Assembly (NCBI RefSeq): GCF_036588685.1 | Contig: NC_086373.1 | Span: forward strand, 106,454,001-106,518,000 | DNA: 64,000 nucleotides | Direction: 5' to 3' | From: Mytilus trossulus | Lineage: Eukaryota | In this document: positions 39,082-63,065 of the stretch, one piece after another | How positions within the stretch are numbered: the first letter of the stretch is position 1 | Layout: each line of letters begins with the position of its first letter | Position numbers and translations under genes: made by a program | The notes under the pieces: generated by a model | The model's input: the letters and a program-made list of their open reading frames with translations, nothing else | Databases searched by the model: none | Told to the model about the DNA's origin: nothing

Positions 39082-42000
39082 ATGGAATATAGAAGAGACA
39101 ATGGACTAGTAGTAAGTGATGAACCAGAAAATGACAGTAATGAAAGCAAACGAATGGACAAATATCGCGTATCTGATGAACAGTGGAAACTTATAGAGGA
39201 ACGACTAAATGGAGGTTCAACAAATGCTGAGAGATCAGGCTCTCAAAGCAGTAATAGTAAATTATCGAAATATAGAATTTCCGGCGAACAATTGGATCAT
39301 TTAGAAAAACGAATGAAATCCAATGGAATTGATCCTAGTCAATCGTCTACACCTCTACGACAAGACAGGTCAGCTTCTTTAAAACAGCACAATAATTATG
39401 AACTTCTAGCAAGACAAGATTCAGCGGACAGTGGTTACGCCAAACTTGATCACATTCGAAATGGATTACATCCGCAAGATATTCCTGATTATGAAAAAGT
39501 AAAGAAATCACCCCATCCTAATCGTAAAGAAAGGTTAGTTTATATTATCATCTTAACAGTTAAATAATATCAATAACTTATTTACATGTATTTTCGTGTT
39601 CATCATGATCCCTTTAAAAGTCAACACATCTTTTTCTCGAAGTATACATACATGTTATTTTTCTCGTTATTACTTTCTTCTAAATAGAGAATTATTGGTA
39701 TTGCATATTGGAAATGGTATCATGATTTATCTTTACATTCAAACTTCTAAGCAACAGTATGTCATTTTTGCAATTTATAGGTTATGAACGATTCCTCTTT
39801 CTGAAATATATTTAGTTCCTTTAATTTTTGTTTTGTTTACCTTGTTGTTTTTGGCTTCCAGTATACCTTGGCGTGATCGTACCTTTCAAATTTAATTCTG
39901 TGTAATATCGCAGTTTGATCGCGATTAGTATGTCATGTGTTCATATATTATACTTCTTGTGTATCTGTTAAATGTATCAAGGATTTTTTGTAGGTTAGCT
40001 TGTTAAAAAATATGTTCAATTATTTGAACATTTGATTTAACTTAAAATTTCAGTCAACGTGTTTAGCATTCCCTTATCTGTCAGGGCATACAATATCAAC
40101 GGACTTCTGATATTAGCCATTTTCTTCTTGTGGTCATTGCTTCATTCTGAAACCAAACAGTTGGCTGGATATTGTTATAAACAAATTTGTCTGTCGGGGA
40201 GTTACTGCATCATCTAAAATAATTTTACGGGTGGAGAACTTGTCATCTACTGTATAAAATGCAGCAAATTCAACGTCTAAATTCCTGTCCGACTCGGCTT
40301 CAAACTCAAACGGACGCCTCTCGAGGGGTTCATGTGACCGAGGAGTCTAAAGTTCATCTACATTGATCCTTTGCCTATCAACTCTTGTCTTGCTTGTGGC
40401 GAGGTGTGCTCGACACCAATCTCAATCTGCCAACTTTGCAAGTTTTCCTGTCGGCGGATCTCTGCAGTTATCCAACCAACTTTTTACTCATTAGATCTCA
40501 AAACAATTATTTTATTTAAATATTTCAAAACTAATATTAAAGTTTTTTCTACTTTAAATTGACATTTTCTTAATACAAGCAATGGTGTACATCAAGTTCA
40601 TTTGAATTTTGGTGAATATAGTGTCTCATTGACAATCATACCAGATTTCTTTATTTTATATATGTAAAATGTATGTAACCTTTTAAAAGAAATTAGAAGT
40701 TACTTTCAATTTTACTGTTCGTTTTATGAGATTTAAATTAGAAAAATTGTGTAATGAATATCTGAGAAAAGATTTCTTCCAGTTTTCACAATGACTTAAA
40801 TACGAAAAAGTCAATATAATAGGTATGCACTGTTATAAGTTATTAATAAAAGAAATATATATTAACTGCCACATTCCTTACGTCTTTTGCCATATCGATA
40901 TATTTTTTAGAACTTGATGATTTCATGAACGTTGTTTGTATCTGATACGTTGCCAGGAACCCGAAATTACAAAAACGATGAGACATAGAAAGTTCACACC
41001 TCATTTTATAAAAGAATAGATGTGAATAAGGAGTAAAATATTTCTTAATTAGGAAAAAAAAGCAGGTTGGCTCTCTTTAAACTGGAACTTAAAGTCTGAA
41101 TCACAATCCTTTAAAGGCATTATGTATAATTAGTTAATGACTAACAGCGTAAATCGACCTGTTTTAAATGTTATAGAGATTTACTCTGACAAAGAAATAT
41201 CAGGATCATTGAATTCTACAATCGGATCATCGATCATTGTAGTAAACAATTTGTATTTAAAATTTTGAATTATTTTCATTTAATTGGGAGAGAAAATGCC
41301 ACATAAAAGGTAGGATTCTAATTTCTCACAATGTTGTATATATGAGAATAAGGGTAAAGAGATAAAACAGTAACATTTTGGCAAGTTTCTAAATCTAATA
41401 TTGTTAAAACTTGTTAATTAACTAACAGAGGAGTGACAAGCGTGTGTGAAATGTATTTTTAAAACTTGTTAATCAATAGTTTTTTGTACAGTTAACAAAT
41501 AACATCAATGATCTTTTGTATTGACGGATTTTCCAATAAAAATCTTTGTGACTTTTTTTTTTGACGGTATTTGCATATACTGTTTATCTTCCAAGAAAGA
41601 TTTCAAAAACATCGTTTGTATAGGGATTTGCCAGATTGTGACATCGAAAACAGTTATCAAAGGTACCAGGATTATAATTTAATATGCCAGACGCGCCACA
41701 CGCGCCAGACGCGCGTTTCGTCTTCAAAAGACACATCAGTGACGATCAGTTATAAAGCCAAACAAGTACAATGTTGAAAAGCATTGAGGACCCAAAATTC
41801 CAAAAAGTTGTGTCAAATACGGCTAAGGTAATCTTTTCATGGATAAGAAAACCCTTAGTTTTACGAGAAATTAAAAGTTTTGTCAACAATAAATTTACTA
41901 AAATGACCATACAATTGGTATTCATGTCAACACCGAAGTGCTGACAACTGGGCTGGTGAAAACCTCGGAGACGAAACGTCCACCAGCAGTGGCATCGACC

Positions 42001-45000
42001 TAGTGGTGTAAATAGTTATCAAAGGTACGATTGACTGCTATTGCATCTATTCTGAATATCAAAAATGTGGTCATTTTTATAAATTTCCTGTTTACAAAAC
42101 TTTGAATTTTTCGAAAAACTAAGAATATTCTGATTCCGAGAAACGAATACCTTAGCCGTATTTGGCAAAACTTTTTGAATTTTGGATTCTCAATGCTCAT
42201 GCTCTTCAACTTTGTATTTGTTTGGCTTTATAAATATTTCGATATGAGCGCCACTGATGAGTCTTATGTAGACAAAACGCGCGTCTGGCGTACTAAATTA
42301 TTATCCTGGAACCTTTGATAACTATAGGTAAAGCTACCTAGATTTGTTTAGGGATTTAACTGATTTTAACATCGATAAACTATTATTACCTCTATTTTAT
42401 AGGATAAATTACTTAGATTTATATAGCATAGGGATTTACTACATTGTAACATCGATAAACTTCTATTGCCTCTATTTTATAGGATAAATTACTTAGATTT
42501 ATATAGCATAGGGATTTACTACATTGTAACATCGATAAACTACTATTGCCTCAATTTTATAGGATAAGATACCTAGATTTGTGTAGGGATTTACCAGATT
42601 GTAAATAGTTATCAAAGGTACCAGGATTATAACATCGATAGCCTACTACTGCCTCTATTTAATAGGATAAGATACCTAACATCGATAAACTTCTATTGCC
42701 TCTATTTTATACGCTAAGATATTTAGATTTGTATAGGGATTTACTAGGTTGTAACATCAATAAACTTCTATTGCCTATATTTTATAGGATAAGATACCTA
42801 GATTTGTTTACGGATTTACCAGATTGTAACATTAAAGAACTGCTATTGCTTCTATTCATTTAAGATACCAAGAAGGCATTAATCAAAACGATAAAAAGAA
42901 AAAAAGGACAACTACATGATCAAACGAAAAAATGGCTAAAAGACCCGCAATAGGTTTGGCATGTCGTCATTTAACCAGGTTCCATACACCATTTTTTCCT
43001 TAAAATGTCCTGTACAAGTCAGTAATATGTTAGTTCTTACCAAATAGTTCGTTTCTATGTGTGTTATATCAACGTTTGTTTTTTGTCGCACTTCGGTGTT
43101 CCTGTTGTTCTTTTGTTTTCCTCTTATAGTTGATGTGTTTTCCTCGGTATTTGTTTGTAACCGGGATTTGTTTTGTCTCAATTGATTTATGACTTTTGAC
43201 TGGTATACTTCTGTTGCCTTTATTTGAAAACAGTCAAGATATAGCACGTATTTCAATCTGAGTACTACGTGCGTCAATAGGATAAAAGAATCTCGTGTGA
43301 CTGCACAGTCAGTAAGAACATAATACAGACAAGATCATTATGCAGGGTGGACGATGTCGGATAGACGCTAGAGTTAATAAATAAGAGGAAAGTATTATTG
43401 CCATCAACGTATTATTGTTTATGTAATGGTTTGCAAAGTCTATAAAAAAATAGACTTCAAATAAAATACCTTTACCGTTATCTGTTTATTGAATTTTCCT
43501 TTCAGTTCATTACAACAGAAGATTCAGCATAGAAAAGAGTTGTCACAAAGTATACAGTCTTTATCATCTGAAGGTAAGAATGTATTTATAGAAGGTTAGA
43601 ATACGATTCTGAAATGTATATTTTCATATTTTCATATTTCAAGATTGACGACACGATCCAAATTTCGAATATGCATTCTATAAAAAGGGTCAATATATCG
43701 GGACATAACAGTTAAAAAAATATTTTAAAAACAAGAATGTGTCCAAAGTGCACGGATGCCCCTCTCGCACTATCATGTTCTATGTTCAGTAAACCATGTA
43801 ATTTGGGCCAAAAATCTAATTTGGCATTAGAATTAGAAAGATCATATGATAGGGAGCATGTGTATTAAGTTTCAAGTTGATGGGACTTAAACTTCATAAA
43901 AAAAATACCTTGACCAAAAACTTTAACCTTAATCGGGACAGACGGACAAATGGAAGAACGAACAGACAGACGAACAAACGGGGGCACAGGTCAGAAAACA
44001 TAATGCCCCTCTATTATCGTAAGTGGGGCATAAAAGTGATGATTTTGACAATTTTAGTATTGGGTAAATTTCTATTTTATCTGTGTTTATTTAAATGAAC
44101 AAAAGGAGATGTAGGATAAATCATAATAAACCAATAGGCTAGCGATATATGTTTGGATATTTATGGATAAATCAAAATAAAATGAGTTAGATTTACAATT
44201 TACGTTTAAGAAAATGAACACTTTGTTATAGTTATCTTAAATAAACTTTGTGTACCGATACCAATAATGTTTTCATAAAATGTTCCTATTTTCTTCGAGT
44301 TAATGGTGACACTTTTTTCTTGGAGTTAATGGTGACACTTTTTTCTTGGAGTTAATGGTGACACTTTTTTCTTGGAGTTAATGGTGACACTTTTTTCTTG
44401 GAGTTAATGGTGACACTTTTTTCTTGGAGTTAATGGTGACACTTTTTCTTGGAGTTAATGGTGACACTTTTTTCTTGGAGTTAATGGTGACACTTTTTTC
44501 TTGGAGTTAATGGTGACACTTTTTTCTTGGAGTTAATGGTGACACTTTTTTCTTGGAGTTAATGGTGACACTTTTTTCTTGGAGTTAATGGTGACACTTT
44601 TTTCTTGGAGTTAATGGTGACACTTTTTTCTTGTAGTTAATGGTGACACTTTTTTCTTGGAGTTAATGGTGACACTTTTTCTTGGAGTTAATGGTGACAC
44701 TTTTTTCTTGGAGTTAATGGTGACACTTTTTTCTTGGAGTTAATGGTGACACTTTTTCTTGGAGTTAATGGTGACACTTTTTTCTTGGAGTTAATGGTGA
44801 CACTTTTTTCTTGGAGTTAATGGTGACACTTTTTTCTTGGAGTTAATGGTGACACTTTTTTCTTGGAGTTAATGGTGACACTTTTTCTTGGAGTTAATGG
44901 TGACACTTTTTTCTTGTATTTCAGCCATACAAGACCTCAAACCACTGACAATTCCAAAAGATGGAGATCTACAAGGATTTTCTGTGGAAGAAATGTCAAC

Positions 45001-45181
45001 ATTCTTTCGGTACATGCGTATTGAAGACAATATAGTGCAAAGACTTAGCAAAAAAAATGTTGACGGAATTAAATTTTCCAAATTAAAAGATACAGACCTT
45101 GAGAATATAGGAATAAAGAATCCAATTGTCATGCATTTTAGAGACAGGAGTTGTAAAAAGAAAATTCCATTCATGTTATAA
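39082..45181 (+). CDS. SAM-domain adaptor A (258 aa): disordered N-terminus with tyrosine motifs, C-terminal GAREM-type SAM domain
   Basis: Exons 39082-39533 (phase 2), 43506-43573 (phase 1) and 44925-45181, 777 nt in frame. The last exon encodes DLQGFSVEEMSTFFRYMRIEDNIVQRLSKKNVDGIKFSKLKDTDLENIGI, a SAM pattern resembling the GAREM C-terminal SAM. Additional small exons cannot be excluded. Confidence 0.75.
41703..41744 (-). ncRNA. Degenerate hammerhead ribozyme copy
   Basis: Same fold as the 38116 copy, but the core reads CTGATGT instead of CTGATGA. Confidence 0.6.
42249..42290 (+). ncRNA. Degenerate hammerhead ribozyme copy
   Basis: cgcca-CTGATGA-gtct..agac-AAAA-cgcgcg-TC-tggcg; the catalytic GAAA is mutated to AAAA. 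Confidence 0.6.
42330..42865. repeat. Degenerate about 71-78-bp tandem repeat
   Basis: Recurring AACATCGATAAACT.CTATTGCCTCTATTTTATAGGATAA..TACCTAGATTT..TAGGGATTTAC. Confidence 0.85.
43730..44033 (+). repeat. Interspersed repeat with internal (GACG/GACA)n microsatellite
   Basis: ACAAGAATGTGTCC..CACGGATGCCCC..GCACTATCAT..CTATGTTCAGT.; a reverse-complement copy lies at about 53240-53526 in the equivalent last intron of adaptor B. Confidence 0.75.
44297..44916. repeat. 26-bp tandem repeat, about 24 copies, ending in the acceptor of the SAM-A exon
   Basis: Unit GAGTTAATGGTGACACTTTTTTCTTG, with the T-run 5 or 6 long. Confidence 0.95.
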
Positions 45182-46501: not shown

Positions 46502-48358
46502 TGTATTATGTCTTTGGGATTGTATTCTGGTGGTACACTTACTGTCTGTTTTATGTCTTTGGAATTGTATTCTGGTGGTACACTTACTGTCTGTTTTATG
46601 TCTTTGGAATTGTATTCTGGTGGTACACTTACTGTCTGTTTTATGTCTTTGGGATTGTATTCTGGTGGTACACTTACTGTCTGTTTTATGTCTTTGGGAT
46701 TGTATTCTGGTGGTACACTTACTGTCTGTTTTATGTCTTTGGGATTGTATTCTGGTGGTACACTTACTGTCTGTTTTATGTCTTTGGAATTGTATTCTGG
46801 TGGTACACTTACTGTCTGTTTTATGTCTTTGGGATTGTATTCTGGTGGTACACTTACTGTCTGTTTTATGTCTTTGGAATTGTATTCTGGTGGTACACTT
46901 ACTGTCTGTTTTATGTCTTTGGGATTGTATTCTGGTGGTACACTTACTGTCTGTATTATGTCTTTGGGATTGTATTCTGGTGGTACACTTACTGTCTGTA
47001 TTATGTCTTTGGGATTGTATTCTGGTGGTACACTTACTGTCTGTTTTATGTCTTTGGGATTGTATTCTGGTGGTACACTTACTGTCTGTATTATGTCTTT
47101 GGGATTGTATTCTGGTGGTACACTTACTGTCTGTATTATGTCTTTGGAATTGTATTCTGGTGGTACACTTACTGTCTGTATTATGTCTTTGGAATTGTAT
47201 TCTGGTGGTACACTTACTGTCTGTTTTATGTCTTTGGAATTGTATTCTGGTGGTACACTTACTGTCTGTTTTATGTCTTTGGAATTGTATTCTGGTGGTA
47301 CACTTACTGTCTGTTTTATGTCTTTGGAATTGTATTCTGGTGGTACACTTACTGTCTGTTTTATGTCTTTGGAATTGTATTCTGGTGGTACACTTACTGT
47401 CTGTTTTATGTCTTTGGAATTGTATTCTGGTGGTACACTTACTGTCTGTATTATGTCTTTGGAATTGTATTCTGGTGGTACACTTACTGTCTGTTTTATG
47501 TCTTTGGAATTGTATTCTGGTGGTACACTTACTGTCTGTTTTATGTCTTTGGAATTGTATTCTGGTGGTACACTTACTGTCTGTTTTATGTCTTTGGAAT
47601 TGTATTCTGGTGGTACACTTACTGTCTGTTTTATGTCTTTGGAATTGTATTCTGGTGGTACACTTACTGTCTGTATTATGTCTTTGGAATTGTATTCTGG
47701 TGGTACACTTACTGTCTGTTTTATGTCTTTGGAATTGTATTCTGGTGGTACACTTACTGTCTGTATTATGTCTTTGGAATTGTATTCTGGTGGTACACTT
47801 ACTGTCTGTTTTATGTCTTTGGGATTGTATTCTGGTGGTACACTTACTGTCTGTTTTATGTCTTTGGAATTGTATTCTGGTGGTACACTTACTGTCTGTA
47901 TTATGTCATTGGAATTGTATTCTGGTGGTACACTTACTGTCTGTTTTATGTCTTTGGAATTGTATTCTGGTGGTACACTTACTGTCTGTTTTATGTCTTT
48001 GGGATTGTATTCTGGTGGTACACTTACTGTCTGTTTTATGTCTTTGGGATTGTATTCTGGTGGTACACTTACTGTCTGTTTTATGTCTTTGGGATTGTAT
48101 TCTGGTGGTACACTTACTGTCTGTTTTATGTCTTTGGGATTGTATTCTGGTGGTACACTTACTGTCTGTTTTATGTCTTTGGAATTGTATTCTGGTGGTA
48201 CACTTACTGTCTGTTTTATGTCTTTGGAATTGTATTCTGGTGGTACACTTACTGTCTGTTTTATGTCTTTGGAATTGTATTCTGGTGGTACACTTACTGT
48301 CTGTTTTATGTCTTTGGGATTGTATTCTGGTGGAATACTTACTGGCCATTTTATGTCT
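46502..48358. repeat. 45-bp tandem satellite, about 41 copies
   Basis: Unit TTATGTCTTTGG(G/A)ATTGTATTCTGGTGGTACACTTACTGTCTGT(T/A), near-perfect. It is the source of the three overlapping about 650-aa ORFs. Confidence 0.97.
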
Positions 48359-48385
48359 TGGACATTGTATGTTTGTGGTATGTGG

Positions 48386-50808: not shown

Positions 50809-53800
50809 ATGGCAGAGGAGGACGATAATTTTGTCAGTAAATTTACTGATTTGTCAACACTACCAGTCAATGGTCACGGAGGGCCAAACAGTGGGTCATC
50901 ACGACTGACTAACGGTCATGACAGGTAAGGCCAGTTACTCATTTTATATCATTTGAACTTTTCTGACCATCTCTAGATTCAATTCAAGAGGCGAGATAGG
51001 ACAATGCTCTCATTATATCTTTTTTCGAAAGTCCTATGCATTTCTTAAATAGCATTGTCCATAAATTAAAAATTCATAGGATGAGAAACAAAACTATTAA
51101 GGGAACAATAAAAAGAACTAGATAGTAGAGGAGGCACGAATACACGGACAGTGTACAGATATTAAGCAATCAAACGGGAAAAAATATATATAGAAAAACA
51201 CAAATTAAGAAAAACCACAAAACAAAACATACAATATAGATAAGTACAATAAAAAAAACATAAAAAAGAGAGAGAATGAAATTTGTACGATGCTGAAATT
51301 TTATGGTCCAGCTAAACAAACTAATACAAAATACACAGACAATGTATCAATATGACTTTATTTCTTTTCATTGATTATGAATTACTTTCATCAGTACCTA
51401 ATTAGTAGGCACTTTTTGTTCTATACTATTCAATATTGATCGTCTTATGTTAAGAGAGGGATTATTTTAAATCTAAGTTTCCTCGTATAACAAAACTTAA
51501 ACCGACTTATAGACAGACAGTTTAAACTGGACATTGATTTGTTTGAACTTGACCAGCTTTAAGGTAGGTTTACATCTAACATGTTGTGTATTGGTGTTTT
51601 TTCACAATGAGTGAGCAGACTTTTTATCCTTTTTCTGAAGTATACTATATTTTTGGAACATAGACAATGTAACACTATCTATATTTATATTGTTGAAATA
51701 CCAAGAGTGGATGTTTTAGCCCAACTACTCAAAAAACAAACACAAGACATTCACACTGTCCTTGTATTATTCTGATACAAAGCAAATGTCTACATGACAC
51801 ATATCTATGAAGTATAAAATATCACAAGATTATTTAGATTTAAAATTTCATTGAATATTTCCAGTTGACAAAATCTGTAACATTTTACCTACTCCTACTT
51901 TAAATGAATCATGTATTCTATTGGTTCATTCTATTTATAAATGAAGATTTAAACCTTTTATAGCTTATTAAATTGTGAATATAGATTAAAATCATAATAG
52001 TTAAAAACAAAGTATTTGGCTTGATAAGACTGAGGATCACATTAGTTGTGGGTGTTAGGAATCTTACTACAAAGTATATATAGTATTATATATACACATT
52101 TTATGGAATAATTTAGTCTACCTAACTGGAACAGAAATACATCAGTATGACAGGAGATTACAGGTATTTTCAAATATTTTAGTTTTTTATTTATTTATAT
52201 GATTGACCTTTTTTTTTTTCTCTTTTATGTGATGGACAATATGTTGATGATAGATCAGTCTAATAAACAAAATCAGAGATCTATAGTATTTTAAGTAGAT
52301 TGATGATAGATAAAACAAAATTCAGTGTTATGTTTCATTTCAGTACCAGAGAACTTCCACCAGTGCCAAATGACTTTCGTCCATCACTTCCAGTTAATCC
52401 ACCAAGGATGATTCCCCCACGGATAACAGTCAGCAGACCCCCATCAGGTAGATATAGAAAGTCTTAACTACTCTTTATGTTTTATTACGAGTCAGACTCT
52501 ATACTCGAGAGTAAATTAGGAATATCTCAAATAGACATTTATATTCGTTAACCAACGGACAATAGTCTAGAGACAAGCAGAATTAAATCAACATATATAC
52601 ATATAAAATATAAATAAATGAAAACAAATATAAGTATAAATAAAAGGTAGCTAACATAACGTGGTTACGCATTTTTTAACTCCAGTAAATGTTCAAAACT
52701 TCTTTAGTTCAGAGGGATTGATCATCATGTGATCTTTAACTTTATATGTAAGATATTAGGTCTGCTGACAACAGGAAATATAAATATATTTTTTTCTACT
52801 TTCGTCCAGTTATAGCAAGGTACGTACATAGAAAAAACAAATACCTGTCTGTTATTGTAAATTGTTATTACCCCAAGATGCCTTTTGGTTATTTTTGTGG
52901 TAGATTTGCTGTCTCATTGACATGCATCTCATATCACTTCTTATTAATATGTATTTACATTGCATTGATATTACACACACATGTATACTATAGTTTTCTA
53001 TATATCAAAATGATCTTTGAATATTTCGGATAAATGATATATTCGTATAAAAATTCAACAAACCAGAAATATCGAAGAAATAAATCACCAATAGTTTCTA
53101 TAACATCGCAGACCCAGTTTCCAAATTACCGTGACCTAGTATCCAATTGAACCAATTTTGTTAACAAATGCAGCCATAAATCTTTTTTTTTACAGATTTT
53201 TTTTAGAGAACAAACCATTTGTGTTGTTTTGTATGACCAATTATGGGCATTATGTTTTCTAGTGTGTGCTTTTGTTCGTTCGTGCGTCCGTTCGTCCGTC
53301 CGTCCGTCCGTCTGTCCCGCTCAGTCAAGTTAAAGTTTTTCGGCCGCTGTAGCTTTTGATGAAGTTGAAGTCCAATCAACTTGAAACTTAGTACTCATGT
53401 TCCCTATGATATAATCTTTTAATTTTTAATGCCAATTTGATATTTTACCCCATTTTCACGGTCCACTGAACATAGAAAATGATAGTGCAGATGGGGCATC
53501 CGTGTATACTATGGACACATTCTTGTGGGTTTTTTTTTATTATTATTTACCATTATACACGTCACTCAGTTTAGTTAAAAAAATAATTTCCACGAAATGA
53601 TCACATTATTTAACAACAAATAAAGTATTCAGTGAAAAAAAAGTAAAATCAATGAAAATGTCTCCTGCGACATTCACAAAAGTCAGCTGAAATTTGTCAC
53701 AAGCATCTATTTCTTACAAAGTGCACAGCATGGACTAATGTCAAATTGTTATGAAATCTGGACAAATAAAACAAAACAATCTTTTTTTATTTTTTATGGA

Positions 53801-54345
53801 TTTGTAGTTAAGCATGGCTGCAATTTAGATTTATGTACTTCTTATTATACAGACACATGGGTTGTACTGAGATCGGTCCAAACACATTTTTTTTCTGGTT
53901 TCACATGTATTCAAAATTAAACTTATGGAATTATATACTTTTATATTCAATAAGGATTAAAAATCTTCTCTTTTTCTTGAATAGACATAGGTGTTAACAT
54001 TGTCAAATGAGTATACTTGGATATATGTACACACACAAGTTCTGATTTACCCTAATGTTTATTTTTTCAGTAATTTCCAAGTTTATCCCAGAACATGAAA
54101 TAATCATTCCAAATGACGGGAACGTATCAAAGTTTACAGTAGAAGAACTCTTAACGTTCCTCAAACATATGGGAGTTAGTGATAGAATAGTTAACCATTT
54201 AAGGAAGAAAAGTGTGGACGGTAAAAGATTTTCAAGACTTAGTGATTCAGAATTGGAAAATGTGGGGATTAAAAATCCCATAATAATATATTTTAGAGAC
54301 AAAAGTAGTGCCAAATCTAAAAAGTCAGCACCATTTATGTTGTAA
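50809..54345 (+). CDS. SAM-domain adaptor B (about 164 aa), paralogue of adaptor A with a proline-rich middle exon
   Basis: Exons 50809-50924 (phase 2), 52344-52447 (phase 1) and 54071-54345, 495 nt in frame, with the same intron phases as adaptor A. The SAM exon aligns with A (IP.DG....F.VEE..TF...M...D.IV..L.KK.VDG..FS.L.D..LEN.GIKNPI...FRD.S....K..PFML*). The middle exon reads TRELPPVPNDFRPSLPVNPPRMIPPR. Confidence 0.75.
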
Positions 54346-57269
54346 CTCATAAGTCCCTTATAACATTCTCATACTTACCATATACTTTTGTTTTGTTATA
54401 TGCTATCGTTACATAACTCACATGTATTGTTTTATCCTAAAATATGAATACTTTTGGAGTTTCTCGTCACAACGAAGAAGATAAAAATGACCAGTATTGG
54501 CCAAATCCATGTGTTAATTATATATCATATATACATATAGTGACAGCATGGACGACAAATAATCAGCATTTATTTATGTAAACGGGTATACAAGTACATT
54601 CATAAAATACATGGTGGTTTAAGACTATGCATTTTGTGATTTGTGAGTGTATTTTTTTTTAATTGACTTAAACATACATTGATCTGTATTTTATCATTCG
54701 GCCAAGATTTGCATTGGGTTTATGAAAAGCAGAAAATGTATAATTATTTACAAATAACTATGCAGGGTTTCTATATATAATTATTGTATATGTTTATTAA
54801 TACCGCTATTTATGAATTTGACTAGGTTATATATAATGTTGTTAGTAAATTTATCTTTCTGAGTAACGAATAATGAATTTGTTAATGTACTCTATCATAA
54901 TAATGTATCATGGTACAACTTGACATTAGATGAGGAAGAATTGAGCCATGTTGCTCTCACATTGAAACAATTGATCTCCTGTTGTAGACCTAATGTATTT
55001 ATATAACCATATCCATTCAAATTTCATAAAAAAAAGTTGCTGCCACTTGACTGTGTACTGTCGGTCAATACAAGCTTGGAAACAAAAAAGTAAATTATAT
55101 AGGTTAACTATTCTAATATATATAGATATGTTGTTAATTATTACACATATGGCAGTTTTTGCTGTTAAATGTTAAAACTAAAAGGTTTTTGTCCAAGCAA
55201 TTAATGTATTTATTAAGTGCGTATTCCGTAATTCTGTGTATCACGGCATAAGAAGTTATTATTCGTTATCCTCCCACCTAAGTCAACTTGAGTCGTCTGA
55301 AGAATTGCTATTTTTCAATTTATGTTACTCGTTTTTTGTATGATCTTCAAATCTAGACAAAAACTTCGTTATAAAATAATATTTCGTGTTGCTAGTTTTC
55401 ACTGCTGACTAGAAGCTGTACTTATAAACGGCCACTCAGACCATTTGCATATTTTAAAAGGGTATACATTTAACACGAAAATATAAAATATACATTGTAT
55501 GTAATTTTAATAGGCTGTTCTCCTTCAACAAAGATAAATATACACAATAAAGGATAAATGGTACATATATCGTTAGTAAAATCGACCTAGAAAAACTGAA
55601 AAATGATATCAAACCTGTATTCAACACACGAATTTGTCACAAAGGAACGGATGATATTACACTACAGGTATAGACATAATAAATAAAATTTTCTTATTTA
55701 AATGCGAGATCAAAATTCATCTGTTCTATTTGAAAATCCCAGTCCCATTTATCCTGCTCCGGGGCAACACTCAAACGATGGCTGTTGTCATTTACTTAAA
55801 GATGCTTCAAATTAATTTATCATAATCAAAAATTAATCAAACCAAAGATGTGTTCCACTGATATTCTTACATAAAAATTTCAGGTTTCTGCCATCATTTG
55901 AAAGTATTTTACATTAAAAATTAACTTATGTGATAGTTTCGAAAACTGTACATGTTTCATGAAGGGACTATATCGAACATTGTCATTATGATGAAATATT
56001 GTAGTTGGTAAAAAATGTCTACATTAAATTTCGATCATATTTTACAAAAACATATATAATTTTTGCCGATTTCAATTTACTCTTTGTAAGTTTGAACTTT
56101 GGTTTTTGTTTATAAAAATTGTTAACTTTGTTCATGTATAAAATATGATGTTATTTTTATATTTAAGTATGTCTTTACAATGCATTTACTATTGTTTAAA
56201 ATTAATAAAACGTGTTATAATATTTTTCTTCTAGTAATGCCTACGAACTATGGTGCATCTCGTAGGGTTGTCACTTGTTTTAAGAGAATCGCTATTTGTC
56301 AAAGAAGGGATGTAGTGTTTTGACACATGTTATAATATCATCATATCTACATGCAGCGTACAAAACTCAAAGCAAGGAAAGTATTGGTCGTTGTTTTATT
56401 TGTTGTTGTTGTTTTTAATTTGGCAGTTTGTCGTCTCAAAGTCAGTCATCGGAGACTTCTCCAGGAGCAGAAGTTCACACCTCGCTGCAAGGTCAAGACG
56501 GACTCTTTCAGTCCCGTTGTGTGGAATTCGATGTCTCTTCGCCATTCCTGTGCATTGAAGACTTTCGTACAACATACGCAGGGAAATAAAATAGAAAAAA
56601 TCAGACTAGAATTACATCACAATTAGTCCGATAATCTAATTCAAACATGCAAAAGCTATGCAGACATTTAGACGATCACAGAACACATAAAGTGTTGCCA
56701 TCGAACAGGTTTGATTAGGATCTTATGTATGCATATGATAGTTTTGGTGAATACACAGACCTAAAGCGAAGAATTAAAGTAGTGCATGCAACGAACATTA
56801 GCAGTGATTTCGTCTAAACACCATAAAGCTTAACTGTCAAATTAACTTTATAAGGCATCATGACACAAACTGCGTACCTGTACTAAACAACACCAACACG
56901 AAGGGAAACGTGCTATACATTGTGGTTTTTTTTTCGGTGAACCTTTCAATACGATGAAAAAGCTCGAATAATACTGCAGGTTTGAAGAATTATATATTCC
57001 ATAAATTATTTTGGGATAAAATCTTTGCTAGATGTCGATAATGCCAAACATGCGAGGACTGTCGCATACATATACAATTCAGCAATAAGGGTAATAGTAA
57101 TTTGTCTTGATCGGGCTTGATCGAGTTGACCTGATCGGCAGTGTGAACCTAGCTTTATGCAACGCTCTATTTCCTTGCCCGATTTTGACTATGCTTTTTG
57201 TCTTTTTTTTGGTTTGAAGTGGTTCATCTCTTTAATTGTATACTTAATTTTAACATATTTTGGCCTTGA

Positions 57270-57313
57270 GCATCACTGACGAGACATTGGTTGTCGAAAT
57301 GCGCATCTGGTGC
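57270..57313 (+). ncRNA. Minimal type I hammerhead ribozyme (intact core, different subfamily)
   Basis: gcatca-CTGACGA-gaca(ttggt)tgtc-GAAA-t(gcgc)a-TC-tggtgc, with compensatory stem changes relative to the 38116 copy. Confidence 0.8.
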
Positions 57314-58622
57314 AGTACCATTGGTACCATTTATGTTATCGAATAAATTAAATGCAGAAATGGTTTTATGGTATGACAGGTGATGTATAGCCGGAGAATC
57401 TTTCTCGGTCGAGGTACATTTCAATTGACATTAGTATAGTACCAACTTTCATTTTCCTGACATTAAAGAATCGTTCTCTGTGATTTGCAATTAGTACTTT
57501 GCAACACACATTTGTATCAATCTAAATGATAAAAAGAACATAATGTAGTCACTGAATCAGCATAATTGATAGGTAGTGCACTTGGCAACTCACGATTAAC
57601 AAGGTAGACAAACTCATCAATTGATTTATTTCATTCACATATTCGTCAACACAGCATTGCATGCATCTTTCGTGAAACATGAATAAATACTCATGGTATT
57701 GAGCTTATAAAACATCGAGCATATGCTAAAAATGCAGAGAAAACACTGCCTAGCCTTTACACAATATGATATCATTAGGTACCTTATGGTTGGTTTTGTC
57801 TGTGTCTTTATGTTTTTTCCTTTTAAGATTTATTCACAACTTGACGTATGTTTTGTATAATTTATAAAAGATTTAGTGTGCAAACCTAAAGACTAACACA
57901 ACTGTTGCTACCCAGGTCACAAAACTGGTTACGTATTCACAGACGAAAAAGAACACTTAGTCTAATTAGATACCTAGTATTAGGTTATCCCTATACTTAA
58001 TATATTTAAATAGGGTTCGATTAATAATATTTTCTCGAAACTTCATAAGAGAAACTTTTAAAAATGTTTCAATCTTTTAATTCTGGTCATTACAGTAATT
58101 TAAATGATCTGTTTAATGATAATTGTATGTGACATATTTAACCGATGGTCATTCATGTAACATTCATGACCCATGGCAATTCATTATGTCAAAATAGATT
58201 TGAAATGTTGCCATATGATAGATGTACACAGCTAATATTCTCACTTCTACAGCGTGTTTAACCGATGTTATAATAATTGCTTCATGTCTTACAAATCTCA
58301 GAATCATAATTCGCATATTACAAACACCTGTTGTCAAGGAGACAAAAATTATCAAAATACTAACTAACATCTGAAAGTGATCAGTTCATTAATACAAACG
58401 TCGAAATGATCAGAACATCTCTGTTTGAATTCATGCTTTTAACGCATTTTCTTTTCATATATCAGTTTCTGAGATTCTGAGATTCCATCATCATCACAGA
58501 ACAAGTCACATTAAGCTGACATGGGAGATAACCGTACTATAATAACGGGCGACGTTTACCTTGATAAATGTGATATCTGAAAAACTTAAATATTGTTATC
58601 GGCCAGGTAATAAAAACAAAAC

Positions 58623-61600
58623 ATGGCGGATAATAATGAAAGGACTAAAAACAGCACAGTTTTTACGCTGAAGGATTTCACGGAATGTTTCACACCACCT
58701 AAAACATTCAAAGTTCTAGGGGGACGTGGATTGTACAGTAATGCCCATACTACCGCACTCCGAGTGGGTGACTCTTTATACCTACATACCTTAGCGGTTG
58801 AGTGGATATGTTTGTCATTTTTTGACACAGACACAGGTATACGACGTGAGGTAAAGGTCCCTCCAGACAGTCACATTAAATTCAATATCGTACACAGATC
58901 AGAAGAAGCTTTTCAAAGGATTTACACTACAGTAGGTGAACTATTAGAGGCCTGGCCGACAAGATTTCAAGCCAACTATGGACGAGAGGATCCCTATCTT
59001 CCTCAAATATTCAGGAAAGGTGAACGGTTTAGATTCATTCGGAGAGCTCAGAATCCAAAGGACAGGAAACTGTGTTTAGAATGTGAGGACGAATCTGGAC
59101 ATATTTTGACCTTACCCGGTAATTGTAGAGGGGATTTCACTGTACTGGACGATCCCAAGTCTTATAATCTCCAGGAAATTGTGGCCTTCGGGGATACGGA
59201 AAGGAAATTAAAATTTTCAGAGGAAAATATTCAGTTAATAGCTGTTGATAACGATGAAAGTTCATTCTATACAAATGTAGGCAATAACGGAGAAATTTTA
59301 ACCAAGCTAACAGGACTACCTCTGACTTATAAAGGTCTGATTACTATGCGCAAACCTAACTTCTTTGTTATTGTTTCACCACAAGATAATCACGATATAA
59401 AGTGGAAAATATCACTCGAAGACGAAATAGAAGTGATGGATCAGCTAGACGACTTTCTACCATCAACCAGAGACATGCCTCTGAATGAATTCATAGACAA
59501 TTTCGAGTTAGACCTTCCTGTTATTGCAAGAATCTCTAATTACGGCAATAAAATAACTCGTTTCGAAGATCATCTTTCTCCTGGAACTGAAGTAATTATT
59601 CATCGTTTTGATAAAGATGTTGATAGAATTCTTGCAAGTACCAAATGTGATATATTTAGTTTAGGAAGTGATGTTCAGGGTAAATTCGACAAATGTAGCA
59701 GACGTTTTAATTCCGTTCAAGCAGTTTTAGACACACGAGAAAAGATCAAACTCAAAGTAACAGAATCAATAGCATGCGATGTTCCAGAACCTTTCTGTTT
59801 AAAATGCGGCGACATTCTTAAATGCACAAATTTTAACATACAAAACGTGAAAATAAGATATGGCAAAAAAGTATATGGTGAATGTCAAGTTGTTCAGTGG
59901 GACATATTAGATGACACTGGTGGTCGTGCAATAATTAAACTACCTGCAGATCTTGAAGTGACGTTGCTAGAAATTGCAGAAGACGACGGTTTTGATGTGT
60001 CGAACATTTTACAGTATCGCGTTGAAGTGCCTATGGACGCTTATTCATTAGATAGTGATAGCTTTGTGCCATTTAATCAAAGTATCCGTTTCGAGCATTA
60101 CGTTTCTGACCCTCTTGTACTCATTTCGCCTATACCTCGCAATTCTGATACAAAACACTCATGTCTCGATGCCAAAATTGACCTTTGTTTAATGGTGCCT
60201 TTACGTCATGACTTGACATTACATCTCAGAGAACGATTGCATTTCCCACCTAGTTACTTCATACTGCCAAGACGGAAGAAATGGCTGTCAACGGGACCAG
60301 AGAAAATATCACTTGAAATATACAACAATTTAATAAAATATAATGATCAAGCTTACGAAGATTATGAATGCAAAGATGAACAAGTTGATACTGCCTCAGG
60401 AAATACTAATTTTGTCGACAGGTAAATTCTTTTGTCATGTGTAACAATATATTTGTTTAATAGTATATTTACTATATATATTTATGCATACAAAGGTATA
60501 GTGTACTATCAATGTACTATCAACACTTAATATCGACAGCAAAAGAAAAGTTATTGGCCAAGATTGGTGACCCTATAGACCGAAGAGATAGCCGAAAACG
60601 AAATATACTTAAGCAAAATAAATAAATATCCAACATCAAAAAGAAAAGACTGAAAGAAATATGGTCTTCGCTTCATTAAAAGCAACCGAATAAATGGTAT
60701 CCCGAGTTTAAATTGTCTTTCATATTTGCACTTGAACTTATAATTGACATTATTTACATTGAACCACTGATAAACCCTTTTACGTGTTATTCATGAATTA
60801 GAAGTGAAAAAAGTCTCGAAAAAGTCCGATTGTCATTTTTATTCCACACTACTGTCATAAGTGTGATGTAGTCTTATTTGTGCTGTGTAGTGTTATAGAG
60901 TACACTTAGATGTGAATTTCTATCTTATATATATATATATATATGACTCTTGTACATTTTTATACACTTGTCTGTCTTAGGATAATAACGTCTTTTTTCG
61001 AGTATTCGAATTTCTTTTCTAAGGACAGTACAACTTATCATTAACAAATTTGCCGTTTGCTCGTTTTGAATTTTTCTCGGAGTTCGGTATTTTTGGGGAT
61101 TTTACTTTTTAAAATCAAATGGAAATAACTCTTCATTTCGTTCGTTTGAACAACACTCTAAACGAATAACTGATATAACATCGTCTACTGTTATTTATTT
61201 ATAGGATGAGGGATGGCGTTCGACGTTTATCTAAATTATCACTGAAGATGACAAGGTCAACAAGTCAAATTAATGTACCAGACGAGGAGAAAACACCTGA
61301 CCTTAGACGAAACTACTCTTTCCAAAGCGAAACAAATATTCCTGGAGTATCTAACAATTTATATGAAAGTGACCCCAGATACAACGGTTTGTTCATATAA
61401 AGTCACATGCATGTCATAAACTCTATCTAGAAATAGTAATTTGAGACTCATCTAAAACTTCTCCTTAACACATCTAACACTTCTCCTTAACACATCTAAA
61501 ACTTCTCATGAAATCATCTAACTACACTTCTTAAACACTTAACACTCATCCTGAACACATCTTGTACTTCTGAACACACCTAACACTTCTTCTGAACACA

Positions 61601-63065
61601 TCTAACACTTCTCCAGAACACATCTAACACTCATGAATACATCTAACCCTCTCAAGAACACATTTAAAACCACTCCTGAACCGTCAAACACTTCTCCAGA
61701 ACATATCTCACACTTCTCCTGAACACATTTTACACTTCTGAACACATTTTGCACCACTCTTCAACACATCTATCACTTCTCCTGAACACATCTTTAACAT
61801 CACTCCGAATCACACCTCACACTTCTCCTGAACACATCTTTTACATCACTCCAAGGACGTATAACTAACATCTAATATACGTCCTTGATCACGCCTAAAC
61901 ACATCAAACATCACTCCTAAACACGTCTAACACCTTTCCTGAACACATTTTACACCACTCTTTATTACATCATACACCTTTCCTGAACACATCTTACATC
62001 ACTCATGATCCCATCTAAAACTTCTCTAGAACACTTCTAATACTTCTGAACACATCCAACACTTCTCCTGAACACATCCAACACTTCTCCTGAACACATC
62101 CAACACTTCTCCTGAACATCCAACACTTCTCCTGAACACATCTAACACTTCTCCTGAACACATCTAACACTTCTCCTGATAACACACCTGACACTTCTAC
62201 TTCTCCAGGAACACACCTGACACTTCCACTTCTCCTGGACACATCTAACACATCTAAACACATATTACACCACACTCCTGAAAACATCTAAAAAACTCAA
62301 TATAACGCTGTTTCTGTCAATGTAGTAAATAAATGATTAAATAACGAAGACCAAAATTGAAAAAAAACACTCTTGAAAGACGAAAATCATCCGATACAAT
62401 TTTATTTCATATGCCAGTAATAAATTAATTCTTGAAAGCTACTGTCTTTTGGCACAGTGTTAATATCACACTGTTGGAACATGTCATATTGTGAAGACCA
62501 ACTTGAATTTTGTTTCTTCTCTAAAATGTGTAATGCAGAATAATTTTCGACTGTCAAATTAAATCATTCTAATTATTTTTTTCAGATGACAATATCTATG
62601 AAGATTACTCAGGTGCTATTCGACGTCCAGAGAAAAATAGTAAGTATATAATACACACAAAGTACCAACAGACAATAACAAGACAAACAATATTCATCAC
62701 AGCATTAAATCGAAATATTAAGATTTAGCGTTACGAACCTCACATAAACCTGGGTGTCAACATGTTACAACCCATCATTGTGATGAACCAATATGAATAC
62801 ACTCTGCGTCTGAGAAAAGGGGGACAAGATGTGTTAGACTAACATAGGGAGACGGAAATGATGATTGCAATATAATGGGTACCGACAAGTTCTATGTAAC
62901 ACGAATAAAAAGATGTATAATAACTGACAAATAGTACTTTATTATGCGATCAATTTGTTTGCTATTCAGAAATCAATTGCTGAAATAATTTATTTGAATT
63001 GTTTTACAGAACAATCCGTTGGTAGAAAACTTCTACGGAGACTGTCCAAGAGAGGGAAGAGGTGA
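58623..63065 (+). CDS. THEMIS-like protein with two tandem CABIT domains (696 aa, 4 coding exons)
   Basis: Exons 58623-60421, 61205-61386, 62586-62639 and 63010-63065; 2091 nt, phases consistent. CABIT1: FTLKDFTECFTPPKTFKV..LRVGDSLYLH..YTTVGELLEAWP..KGERF..LECEDESGHILTLPGNCRGDF..YNLQEIV. CABIT2: LNEFIDNFELDLPVIARI..LSPGTEVIIHR..RILAS..GKFDKCSRRFNSV..LKCGDIL..IKLP. Domain call is from remembered family motifs. Confidence 0.85.
61448..62290. repeat. Degenerate about 22-bp tandem repeat after exon 2 of the CABIT gene
   Basis: Recurring AACACATCTAACACTTCTCCTG with strong CA/CT strand bias. Confidence 0.9.

What the first reader, a model, noticed from the sequence alone, without database searches (positions are those of the whole stretch)
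39082..63065. Three-gene cluster that looks like a THEMIS/GAREM signalling module split into separate genes
Seen: three adjacent co-oriented genes. Adaptor A has tyrosine motifs plus SAM, adaptor B has a proline-rich SH3 ligand plus SAM, and the third gene has a double CABIT with no SAM and no obvious PxRPxK-type motif. Known: vertebrate GAREM is CABIT + proline-rich GRB2 site + C-terminal SAM and recruits SHP2; THEMIS is CABIT-CABIT + proline-rich GRB2 site + C-terminal tyrosine and regulates SHP1 downstream of the T-cell receptor. Inference: the parts that vertebrates carry on one chain are encoded here side by side as separate proteins and may assemble in trans. SAM-SAM pairing of A and B could join pTyr docking sites to an SH3 ligand, giving an invertebrate, possibly haemocyte, phosphotyrosine signalling system. 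The SAM genes lie upstream of the CABIT gene, so ordinary cis-splicing cannot make a GAREM-order fusion.
Basis: partly seen in the sequence, partly recalled or inferred. Interest (0 to 1): 0.85.

Follow-up and report, generated by a model that had tools for sequence, protein, structure and literature searches.

The report
Two SAM adaptors beside THEMIS-like gene
Three real, separately transcribed mussel genes sit side by side: two small adaptor proteins with an unusual SAM domain, and a THEMIS-like double-CABIT protein. The idea that they work together as a split THEMIS/GAREM signalling unit is plausible but rests on thin, indirect evidence.

Summary
The window is Mytilus trossulus chromosome DNA. 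The three co-oriented genes match RefSeq models exon by exon at 100% identity:
- A: 258 aa, tyrosine cassette plus a SAM-like end.
- B: 164 aa, proline-rich exon plus a SAM-like end.
- C: 696 aa, tandem CABIT, with no SAM and no PxRPxK motif.

A and B are old paralogues. They belong to an uncharacterised family of small proteins found in molluscs and a leech. These proteins carry a divergent five-helix SAM domain (IPxDGN motif) and nearly all end in -FML. C aligns collinearly with solved THEMIS (E = 2e-15).

The split-module reading is only partly supported.
- For: in 1.8 billion proteins, the only protein in which this SAM type is joined to another recognised domain is a brittle-star CABIT + proline-rich + 2xSAM protein. 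It nests inside the family tree. The locus also lies in a CABIT-rich chromosome region.
- Against: a separate GAREM-like CABIT gene with its own weak SAM-like tail lies 145 kb downstream. B's proline motifs are Sos-type, not THEMIS-type. PDB comparisons do not single out the GAREM SAM. A-B-C adjacency is shown only within mussels. Nothing shows physical interaction or haemocyte expression.

RNA contigs show B and C as separate transcripts. Interest is moderate.

The parts
39082..45181 (+). Gene A (LOC134695962, 258 aa). Exons 39082-39533, 43506-43573, 44925-45181.
   Evidence: GT-AG splice sites and phases. Exon-wise 100% to P0112 = XP_063413539.
39157..39279 (+). Two copies of a K-Y-R-[VI]-S-x-E-Q motif in gene A (DKYRV 39157-39171, SKYRI 39265-39279).
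   Evidence: Coordinates. The same motif (LSKYR, KAKYRV, MNKYKV) recurs in A-type and long-type relatives. Function unknown.
39397..39501 (+). Tyrosine cassette of gene A: YELL (Y106) - 9 residues - YAKL (Y119) - 14 residues - YEKV (Y137).
   Evidence: Related Y-E-K, YxxL and YDNL motifs occur in A-type orthologues of oyster, scallop and unionids.
44925..45178 (+). SAM-like domain of gene A, ending in the C-terminal ...KKKIPFML.
   Evidence: Family model 119.8 bits. About 52% identical to B's domain.
50809..54345 (+). Gene B (LOC134696060, 164 aa). Exons 50809-50924, 52344-52447, 54071-54345. Isoform X2 (131 aa) starts at the alternative first exon 52147-52163.
   Evidence: A spliced exon 2-exon 3 junction is seen in an RNA contig of run X6 (loose end at 54067).
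52344..52447 (+). Proline-rich exon of gene B: RELPPVP (class I form), PVNPPR (class II PxxPxR), IPPR, SRPPS.
   Evidence: The RxLPPVP and PxxPPR motifs are conserved in Mytilus, oysters, Tegillarca, Solemya and Mya. PSIPPR or PRIPPK occur in other members, Haliotis among them.
54071..54342 (+). SAM-like domain of gene B (IPNDGN motif, DGKRF, NPIIIYFRDKS), ending ...APFML.
   Evidence: Pfam SAM_1 E = 5e-4, below the cut-off. AF2 gives five helices at pLDDT 82. Foldseek matches SAM structures. Family model 124 bits.
54346..56078 (+). Probable long 3' UTR of gene B.
   Evidence: RNA-type contigs of X1 and X6 run on from the stop to about 55076. Further pieces reach 56078 (table 8). Contigs only, so the true end is not fixed.
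58551..63065 (+). Gene C (LOC134696053, 696 aa). Transcript contigs begin near 58551-58554. Coding exons 58623-60421, 61205-61386, 62586-62639, 63010-63065.
   Evidence: Exon 1 is 100% and exon 2 matches (apart from intron-derived ends) to P0142 = XP_063413691. Exons 3 and 4 rest on P0001, the GT-AG sites and the length sum.
58656..59430 (+). CABIT1 of gene C (approximate bounds), with the conserved cysteine in LECED (59076-59090).
   Evidence: Pfam CABIT best stretch at residues 44-188. Aligns with THEMIS 129-191 around its CABIT1 cysteine. C154 is invariant in 16 bivalve sequences.
59472..60300 (+). CABIT2 of gene C (approximate bounds). The position of the CABIT2 signature cysteine is W in mytilids (VVQWD, 59889-59903) and C in other bivalves.
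   Evidence: Profile positions 269-531 align with THEMIS 241-497, E = 4e-11 for the stretch. Alignment columns 401-500.
60351..60365 (+). AYEDY motif just after CABIT2, where THEMIS has its proline-rich sequence.
   Evidence: D575, Y578, E579 and Y581 are invariant in 16 bivalve sequences. Coordinates. The positional match to THEMIS comes from a non-significant alignment stretch.
62586..62639 (+). Exon 3 of gene C, encoding DDNIYEDY. This second tyrosine motif is conserved as IYE[DS][YV] in clams.

Best explanation
These are three independent protein-coding genes for non-enzymatic signalling adaptors.

A and B are ancient tandem paralogues of a family of small cytosolic proteins found in molluscs and a leech. 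Each has a disordered N-terminal part carrying short docking motifs, then a divergent SAM domain, then a basic stretch and a nearly invariant C-terminal F-M-L.

Most likely mechanism (inferred, not shown):
- The SAM domains pair or chain with each other, A with A, B with B or A with B.
- Phosphorylated A offers YxxL/YEK sites to SH2 proteins. The spacing suits tandem-SH2 proteins of the SHP2 or Syk kind.
- B offers class I/II proline motifs to SH3 proteins. These are of Sos1 type, so a GRB2/Drk N-terminal SH3 or similar.
- The -FML tail is a further docking element with the form of a class II PDZ ligand.

C is a bivalve THEMIS-architecture protein with tandem CABIT domains. It has lost, or never had, the proline-rich GRB2 site, and instead carries two conserved YE[DS][YV] tyrosine motifs.

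Shown here: the genes, their transcripts, the folds and families, and the conservation of the motifs. Not shown: that A or B acts with C. If they meet, it would be through shared SH2/SH3 partners, not SAM-SAM contact, because C has no SAM.
For: Gene models: exon-wise matches to RefSeq proteins of the same species.

Transcription: B and C lie on separate contigs, the B exon 2-3 junction is seen, C contigs start at 58551-58554, and there are no joints between the genes.

Family: 80 hits in 1.8 billion proteins. Nearly all are small proteins with IPxDGN...DGKxF...NPxxxxFRD...FML. Named members are bivalves, gastropods and Helobdella.

Only two copies of this domain exist in the 1.3-Gb genome.

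SAM fold: AF2 pLDDT 82, five helices, Foldseek probability 1.0 to SAM structures.

Age of the paralogues: A groups with oyster A-type (100/94) and more loosely with scallop A-type (94/79). B groups with scallop B-type (95/84).

Motif conservation: RxLPPVP and PxxPPR in B-types; YEK, YxxL and YDNL in A-types.

C against THEMIS: E = 2e-15, both CABIT domains in order. C has no PxRPxK and only one PxxP. AYEDY and IYE[DS][YV] are conserved.

SH3 preferences of GRB2 are taken from PMC13381594.
Against: No binding, phosphorylation or oligomerisation was tested.

Short tyrosine and proline motifs arise easily in disordered regions. The Mytilus PVNPPR has N where Sos1 has a hydrophobic residue.

The SAM scores lie below Pfam's cut-off. 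Some SAM domains bind RNA or lipid, or stay monomeric.

The -FML tail may have a function other than PDZ binding.

In runs X9 and X11 only C contigs were found, although contigs cannot show absence.

The tissue of expression is unknown.
Confidence: 0.55

Rival explanations
1. A, B and C assemble in trans into the functional equivalent of a single-chain GAREM/THEMIS adaptor, and the adjacency reflects that shared function.
For: A brittle-star protein joins CABIT, a proline-rich stretch and two SAM domains of exactly this type on one chain.

All seven CABIT hits of the genome lie on this chromosome. Three of them lie 130-145 kb downstream (finding s1-827212).

The neighbouring 1333-aa CABIT ORF has a tail that aligns in register with the A/B SAM (hhalign P = 4.7e-4).

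C lacks the proline-rich site that B has.

B and C contigs are found together in two of four runs.

The gene order A-B-C is kept in five Mytilus species, and an A-type and a C-type gene probably share a 167.5-kb contig in another mytilid.
Against: C has no SAM, so SAM pairing cannot recruit it.

B's motifs are not of the THEMIS PxRPxK kind (PMC13381594).

The CABIT domain of the brittle-star protein resembles the single-CABIT genes at 82 Mb, not C.

The GAREM1 SAM is no closer than Polyhomeotic SAM in PDB searches.

Conservation within one family of mussels is what descent alone would give.

The A/B family is found more widely (gastropods, leech) than C-type genes have been seen (bivalves only).
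Confidence: 0.2
2. The three genes are neighbours by chance and have unrelated roles. A and B serve some PDZ or SAM scaffold unconnected to CABIT proteins. C works like Drosophila Serrano, in cell polarity through Dishevelled, and not in phosphotyrosine or immune signalling.
For: Adjacent genes in animal genomes are usually not functionally linked.

Serrano is a CABIT protein that binds Dishevelled and controls planar polarity (PMC2776533).

The nearly invariant C-terminal FML of A and B points to a partner of its own.

The long-type SAM gene and the C-type gene of Mactra lie about 1300 locus tags apart on the same chromosome.
Against: The brittle-star fusion argues for some CABIT-SAM connection.

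C keeps conserved tyrosine motifs in the place where THEMIS has its tyrosines and GRB2 site.
Confidence: 0.22
3. B and C are one transcription unit that encodes a SAM-then-CABIT fusion protein, as in the 862-aa M. edulis model CAG2193553.
For: That deposited model joins B residues 1-137 to C through short intergenic exons.
Against: The model uses a donor inside the SAM exon, so it destroys the domain and drops the conserved FML end.

RefSeq models in five species keep the genes apart.

No contig in four runs joins them. Nothing covers 56200-56999, where the bridging exon would lie. C contigs begin at 58551-58554.

Transcript contigs of C and B orthologues from other species are 2.6-2.9 kb and 1-2.5 kb, which fits single genes.
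Confidence: 0.03

Closest known systems
THEMIS / THEMIS2 (vertebrate tandem-CABIT adaptors)
   Same: Gene C has two CABIT domains in the same order. A profile of the bivalve family matches solved THEMIS chains at E = 2e-15. The CABIT1 cysteine is conserved. A helix rich in tyrosine and basic residues follows CABIT2.
   Different: C has no PxRPxK proline-rich sequence. In THEMIS that sequence is needed, together with the CABIT domains, to bind the GRB2 C-terminal SH3 domain (PMC13381594). The CABIT2 cysteine is W in mussels. The tail carries YE[DS][YV] motifs. Identity to THEMIS is low, and orthology to vertebrate THEMIS rather than independent CABIT duplication was not tested.
GAREM1 / GAREM2 (CABIT + proline-rich GRB2 site + C-terminal SAM)
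   Same: The same three kinds of part are present in the locus. The GAREM1 SAM (PDB 2dkz) is among the top matches of the A/B SAM by sequence profile and by fold. A brittle-star protein with GAREM-like order carries the A/B type of SAM.
   Different: Here the parts lie on three proteins, in SAM-first gene order, and C has two CABIT domains. The match to 2dkz (E about 0.01-0.02) is no better than the match to Polyhomeotic SAM. A separate GAREM-like ORF exists 145 kb away.
HYP/Aveugle with CNK, and SAMD12 with CNK2 (small SAM-only partners of a SAM-bearing scaffold)
   Same: These are small proteins that consist of little more than a SAM domain and work by SAM-SAM heterodimers in Ras/MAPK signalling. 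The CNK/HYP SAM complexes are among the best fold matches.
   Different: A and B carry extra tyrosine or proline docking motifs and the FML tail. No SAM-bearing scaffold partner is identified. No significant sequence similarity to these proteins was found.
SLP-76 (LCP2) and Gab-type docking adaptors
   Same: They share the logic of a SAM or other targeting domain plus phosphotyrosine sites plus SH3 ligands on a disordered chain. The SLP-76 SAM is a weak PDB hit.
   Different: Domain order differs, with SAM at the N-terminus in SLP-76. A and B have no SH2 or PH domain, are much smaller, and split the tyrosine and proline functions between two paralogues.
Drosophila Serrano (Sano)
   Same: It is an invertebrate cytoplasmic member of the CABIT family (PMC2776533).
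   Different: It has a single CABIT architecture and acts with Dishevelled in planar polarity. No link to SAM adaptors is reported. It was not compared by sequence here.

Membership tests
THEMIS-type tandem-CABIT proteins (gene C) | Two CABIT domains in tandem, collinear with THEMIS | tested here: met
   Pfam CABIT with two stretches, E = 1e-15. The bivalve profile against PDB THEMIS 9i3p_B gives E = 2e-15. The CABIT1 piece aligns with THEMIS 129-191 and the CABIT2 piece with THEMIS 241-497.
THEMIS-type tandem-CABIT proteins (gene C) | Conserved cysteine in each CABIT domain | tested here: inconclusive
   The CABIT1 cysteine (C154) is invariant. At the CABIT2 position mytilids have W, while clams have C. 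The residue is a buried structural one in THEMIS (bioRxiv 10.1101/2024.10.01.616165).
THEMIS-type tandem-CABIT proteins (gene C) | Proline-rich PxRPxK sequence after CABIT2 that binds the GRB2 C-terminal SH3 domain | tested here: not met
   No PxRPxK or PxxxRxxK. There is one PxxP, inside CABIT1, and the tail is 3.7% proline. The same holds in four of the five bivalve sequences checked; P0007 has one PxxxRxxK-pattern match in its tail.
THEMIS-type tandem-CABIT proteins (gene C) | Binding of GRB2 and regulation of SHP1/SHP2 | not testable with these tools
   Needs pull-down or co-immunoprecipitation.
GAREM family (gene C, or the trio as a whole) | One chain with a single CABIT, a proline-rich GRB2 site and a C-terminal SAM | tested here: not met
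   C has two CABIT domains, no proline-rich site and no SAM. The SAM domains sit on separate upstream genes that end in stop codons.
SAM domain (genes A and B) | Sequence score above the Pfam SAM_1 or SAM_2 gathering cut-off | tested here: not met
   B scores 20.8 and 19.7 bits against a cut-off of 23. A has no hit at E up to 0.1 as an exon, and its M. edulis orthologue scores 14.1 bits.
SAM domain (genes A and B) | Five-helix SAM fold | tested here: met
   AF2 model of B's domain with 28 family sequences: pLDDT 82, helices at 24-33, 38-46, 51-55, 59-65 and 70-81. Foldseek's top 50 are almost all SAM structures, at probability 0.93-1.0.
GAREM-type SAM (genes A and B) | Closer to the SAM of GAREM/CABIT proteins than to other SAM families | tested here: inconclusive
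   For: the brittle-star CABIT protein's SAM domains score 43 and 33 bits against 16-31 for ordinary SAM repeats, and the first nests inside the family tree. The tail of the neighbouring CABIT ORF aligns at P = 4.7e-4. Against: human GAREM1 SAM 2dkz scores E = 0.0096-0.024, level with Polyhomeotic at 0.019-0.024. No set of vertebrate GAREM, EPS8 or other SAM sequences could be fetched.
ITAM-like tandem tyrosine motif (gene A) | YxxL/I, 6-12 residues, YxxL/I | tested here: met
   YELL - 9 residues - YAKL at 39397-39447. Saccostrea A-type has YEVL - 8 residues - YDNL. It is met as a pattern only. A is a soluble protein, not a receptor tail, and phosphorylation is untested.
SH3 ligands (gene B) | Class I [RK]xxPxxP and class II PxxPx[RK] consensus, conserved among orthologues | tested here: met
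   RELPPVP and PVNPPR in Mytilus. At least one of the two patterns matched in 13 of the 15 B-type and related sequences checked; for one of the two without a match (Ylistrum P0017) the scan was cut short before its proline-rich stretch. Binding is untested.

The most novel reading that the evidence does not exclude
The small SAM-FML adaptors are the ancestral, trans-acting partners of CABIT proteins across bilaterians. On this view the SAM of GAREM and the two SAM domains of the brittle-star CABIT protein are the fused form of the same partnership. In mussels the pair A/B then supplies tyrosine and SH3-ligand docking sites to the THEMIS-like protein C, which lacks a proline-rich site. This would be an invertebrate CABIT-SAM phosphotyrosine signalling system built from separate chains.
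Probability: 0.2. Interest if true: 0.75.

Novelty: new variant of a known kind. Interest (0 to 1): 0.45.

Why it matters
THEMIS and GAREM are studied almost only in vertebrates, and how CABIT domains work is only now becoming clear from structures.

A bivalve THEMIS-architecture protein that lacks the GRB2-binding proline-rich sequence is a natural test of which CABIT functions are ancestral.

The A/B proteins define an unnamed, conserved family of invertebrate adaptors: a divergent SAM, the IPxDGN motif and the -FML end. Nothing is known about them.

If the single fusion seen in a brittle star reflects a real partnership, the locus would offer a simple system for studying how SAM pairing, SH2 sites and SH3 ligands are combined with CABIT scaffolds. 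If not, these are three ordinary uncharacterised adaptor genes that happen to be neighbours.

Tried and rejected
I fell back on accession order and equal contig lengths. This supports adjacency in five Mytilus species, an A-type and a C-type gene probably on one 167,503-bp contig in another mytilid, and A-type and B-type genes on one 3.9-Mb scaffold in Saccostrea. It says nothing about C elsewhere.

2. The search for homologous proteins with the brittle-star protein found only the protein itself. With a family alignment it gave 12 hits, and none shared a contig length with a C-type gene. No vertebrate GAREM sequences could be obtained, so the SAM tree has no GAREM, SLP-76 or EPS8 rows. It is rooted at the midpoint, and the ordinary SAM repeats added as reference rows fall next to B-type sequences.

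3. PDB profile searches with 28 and 69 family sequences did not separate GAREM1 SAM from Polyhomeotic SAM. The brittle-star protein alone hit nothing in the PDB.

4. The AF2 model of gene C from 16 sequences was poor (pLDDT 59, pTM 0.37), and its Foldseek matches are meaningless. The THEMIS relation rests on the sequence profile alone.

5. The Atlas searches gave only generic SAM leads under 0.9.

6. Rejected: B supplying a THEMIS-type PxRPxK in trans, because the motif is absent. Rejected: B isoform X2 lacking the proline-rich exon, because it only uses another first exon. Rejected: an upstream 5' exon of C near 56.5 kb, because no contig covers it.

7. No paper in the library mentions CABIT together with molluscs.

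8. Spliced models were not joined. All searches used single exons by reference or RefSeq proteins returned by the tools.

Full report
**What the window is.** The region is AT-rich animal DNA. The CABIT ORF is 94% identical to a Mytilus californianus protein. The window lies at C1:106454001-106518000 of a 1.3-Gb genome. Its 113,486,924-bp contig has the same length as the Mytilus trossulus RefSeq contig that carries LOC134695962, LOC134696060 and LOC134696053. Each exon that could be aligned matches those three proteins at 100%, apart from residues at the exon ends. The species is therefore M. trossulus, and RefSeq already annotates the three genes as 'uncharacterized protein'.

**Observation.** All three genes are on the + strand.

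| Gene | Size | Coding exons |
|---|---|---|
| A | 258 aa | 39082-39533, 43506-43573, 44925-45181 |
| B | 164 aa | 50809-50924, 52344-52447, 54071-54345 |
| C | 696 aa | 58623-60421, 61205-61386, 62586-62639, 63010-63065 |

- All introns checked have GT-AG ends, and the exon lengths sum to the right number of codons.
- B has a second isoform of 131 aa. It starts at an alternative first exon (52147-52163) and keeps the proline-rich exon.
Each exon was used by reference, or the RefSeq proteins returned by the tools were used.

**Transcripts.** Contigs of four public runs were laid on 54000-59999. The runs hold about half of the sampled words of C's exon 1, and they behave as RNA assemblies.
- In run X6 a contig carries the end of B's exon 2 directly before 54067, which is a spliced junction.
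- B's last exon and a long 3' stretch (to about 55076, with pieces to 56078) are present in X1 and X6.
- C's exon 1 is present in all four runs, and its contigs begin at 58551-58554, about 70 bases before the ATG.
- No joint links B to C, and nothing covers 56200-56999.
- The 862-aa M. edulis model CAG2193553 fuses B to C through a donor inside the SAM exon. It is therefore most likely a prediction artefact.
- Contigs show presence only. They give no levels, and the samples are coded, so tissue is unknown.

**Genes A and B.** The two last exons are about 52% identical to each other.
- A search of 1.84 billion representative proteins with B's exon gave only 80 hits at E up to 0.001. Nearly all are small proteins of about 90-370 aa with the domain at the very C-terminus.
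- The shared pattern is [IL]PxDGN[LIV]xxF, DGKxF, NPxxxxFRD[RK]S, a basic run and a final F-M-L.
- Named members come from bivalves (Mytilus, oysters, scallops, Tegillarca, Solemya, Mya, Mactra, unionids), gastropods (Haliotis, Plakobranchus) and the leech Helobdella.
- None has a functional name.
- Pfam sees the domain only below its SAM cut-offs.
- The AF2 model built with 28 family sequences is a confident five-helix bundle (pLDDT 82). Its best structural matches are SAM domains: Scm/Sfmbt, Ph, GAREM1 2dkz and CNK/HYP.
- The mussel genome holds only these two copies, plus one broken fragment on another chromosome.

In a maximum-likelihood tree of the domain (79 rows, 91 columns, many forks unresolved) two groupings are supported:
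- Mytilus A groups with Saccostrea A-type (100/94), and more loosely with Argopecten A-type (94/79).
- Mytilus B groups with a scallop B-type (95/84).

The duplication is thus older than the split of mussels, oysters and scallops. In Saccostrea echinata both types lie on one 3.9-Mb scaffold and have close accession numbers.

**Docking motifs.**
- B-types have few or no tyrosines before the SAM domain. They carry a conserved RxLPPVP (class I form) and PxxPPR (class II, PxxPxR). In Mytilus these are RELPPVP and PVNPPR, followed by IPPR and SRPPS.
- According to PMC13381594, PxxPxR is the Sos1-type motif preferred by the N-terminal SH3 domain of GRB2. The C-terminal SH3 domain favours PxRPxK or PxxxRxxKP. 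B has neither of those.
- A-types have no such proline motifs, but tyrosine motifs recur. Mytilus A has YELL - 9 residues - YAKL - 14 residues - YEKV (39397-39501). Saccostrea has YEVL - 8 residues - YDNL. Y-E-K recurs in scallop, unionid and long-type members.
- The first pair in Mytilus fits the ITAM pattern as a pattern only.
- These are consensus matches in disordered sequence. Binding and phosphorylation are inferred.

**Gene C.**
- Pfam finds CABIT in two stretches.
- A profile of 16 bivalve sequences matches the solved THEMIS chains (9i3p_B, 9uou_B, 9iaz_B) at E = 2e-15. A CABIT1 piece aligns around the conserved cysteine, and a 260-residue CABIT2 piece follows in the same order.
- The CABIT1 cysteine is invariant. 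The CABIT2 cysteine is W in mytilids and C in clams.
- Right after CABIT2, where THEMIS has YY-MM-RR and then PPPRPPKHP, the bivalve proteins have a similar helix (E-K-I-S-x-x-x-Y-x-x-L-I-[KR]-[YH]-N-D). It is followed by the invariant A-Y-E-D-Y and no prolines. That part of the alignment is not significant in itself.
- The tail exons add a second conserved I-Y-E-[DS]-[YV].
- C has one PxxP, no PxRPxK, 3.7% proline in the tail and no SAM.
- C therefore meets the architecture of THEMIS but not its GRB2-binding feature. In THEMIS that feature is required together with the CABIT domains.
- The AF2 model of C was too poor to use.

**Is there a CABIT-SAM link?** Three points speak for one.
1. Among the 80 hits, the only protein that joins this SAM type to another recognised domain is Amphiura filiformis XP_072016742. 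It has a Pfam CABIT domain (E = 4e-28), a proline-rich stretch and two SAM domains that carry the DGN motif. The other hits with more than one domain stretch are tandem repeats of ordinary SAM or an unrelated repeat protein. Against a family model built without them, the two Amphiura domains score 43 and 33 bits. Ordinary SAM repeats score 16-31 bits. The first domain nests inside the family in the tree, on a long branch.
2. All seven CABIT hits of the mussel genome lie on this one chromosome.
3. One of those three is a 1333-aa ORF with a CABIT domain and a long tyrosine- and proline-rich middle. Its C-terminal 60 residues align in register with the A/B domain (hhalign P = 4.7e-4). They are also the best non-family match among about 1600 open stretches. 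Pfam and the PDB see nothing there.

Five points speak against the stronger claim.
1. That same ORF shows that mussels have a GAREM-like single-chain protein of their own.
2. The Amphiura CABIT domain resembles the single-CABIT genes at 82 Mb, not C.
3. Human GAREM1 SAM (2dkz) is the first or second PDB hit, but at E = 0.01-0.02 it is level with Polyhomeotic SAM.
4. The order A-B-C is documented only in M. trossulus, edulis, galloprovincialis, coruscus (B and C only) and californianus (B and C only). An A-type and a C-type gene probably share a 167.5-kb contig of another mytilid. Common descent explains all of this.
5. C has no SAM with which to pair.

**Verdict.**
- The best-supported reading is three separate adaptor genes: an old pair of SAM-FML adaptors, one offering tyrosine sites and one offering SH3 ligands, next to a THEMIS-architecture gene without the proline-rich site.
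- SAM-mediated pairing of A and B, and docking of SH2 and SH3 proteins, is the most likely way A and B work. This is inferred from fold and motif conservation.
- A functional module with C is possible. I put it at about 0.2.
- A haemocyte or immune role is untested. The one studied invertebrate CABIT protein, Serrano, acts in planar polarity through Dishevelled (PMC2776533).
- No paper in the library deals with mollusc CABIT genes.

Noticed in passing
G000 chromosome C1: 82.09, 82.13, 99.59, 106.51, 106.647 (-), 106.660 and 109.316 Mb (loci L004-L010): All seven Pfam CABIT matches in the 1.3-Gb genome lie on this one 113-Mb chromosome. That is far more clustering than chance would give, so the family seems to have grown by intrachromosomal duplication. 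The count is a lower bound.
   Followed up: partly
L021:574-4575 (C1:106659573-106663574), + strand: A single 1333-aa ORF with an N-terminal CABIT domain. Its middle is long, acidic and repeat-rich, with PPPVCSPPPLP and many Yxx motifs. Its C-terminal stretch is weakly SAM-like. It looks like the mussel's GAREM-type gene.
   Followed up: partly
window 46502-48370; 44289-44916; 61449-62198: Three minisatellites. A 45-bp unit in 41.5 copies (98% matches) lies between genes A and B and gives long false ORFs in three frames. A 26-bp unit in 24 copies ends 8 bases before the acceptor of A's SAM exon. A 22-bp unit in about 35 copies lies in intron 2 of gene C.
   Followed up: no
C-termini of A (45167-45178) and B (54331-54342), and of nearly all family members: The proteins end in a basic run followed by F-M-L (variants FLL, FIL, FVL). 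This has the form of a class II PDZ ligand.
   Followed up: partly
M. edulis CAG2193553 (P0146): This deposited 862-aa model fuses genes B and C. As a result the 90% protein cluster of the CABIT gene also holds the 164-aa SAM proteins. It is an annotation artefact that could mislead domain-architecture surveys.
   Followed up: yes
window 1172-1447 and 4115-4363 (- strand); 26749-27054 (+ strand): Upstream of the trio lie exons of a RING-finger gene (CPICL...NCGHCFC) on the minus strand, and a glutamate/lysine-rich coiled-coil exon on the plus strand. Neither was examined further.
   Followed up: no
G000:C3:24279223-24279429 (- strand; L020): A third, broken copy of the A/B SAM-like exon with three in-frame stops (profile E = 0.26 genome-wide; 16 bits against the local family model). 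It is probably a pseudogene fragment.
   Followed up: no
window 57097-57157 and 57271-57328: Short pieces of unrelated contigs from several runs land here and continue into sequence unlike the window. This is probably a dispersed repeat between genes B and C.
   Followed up: no
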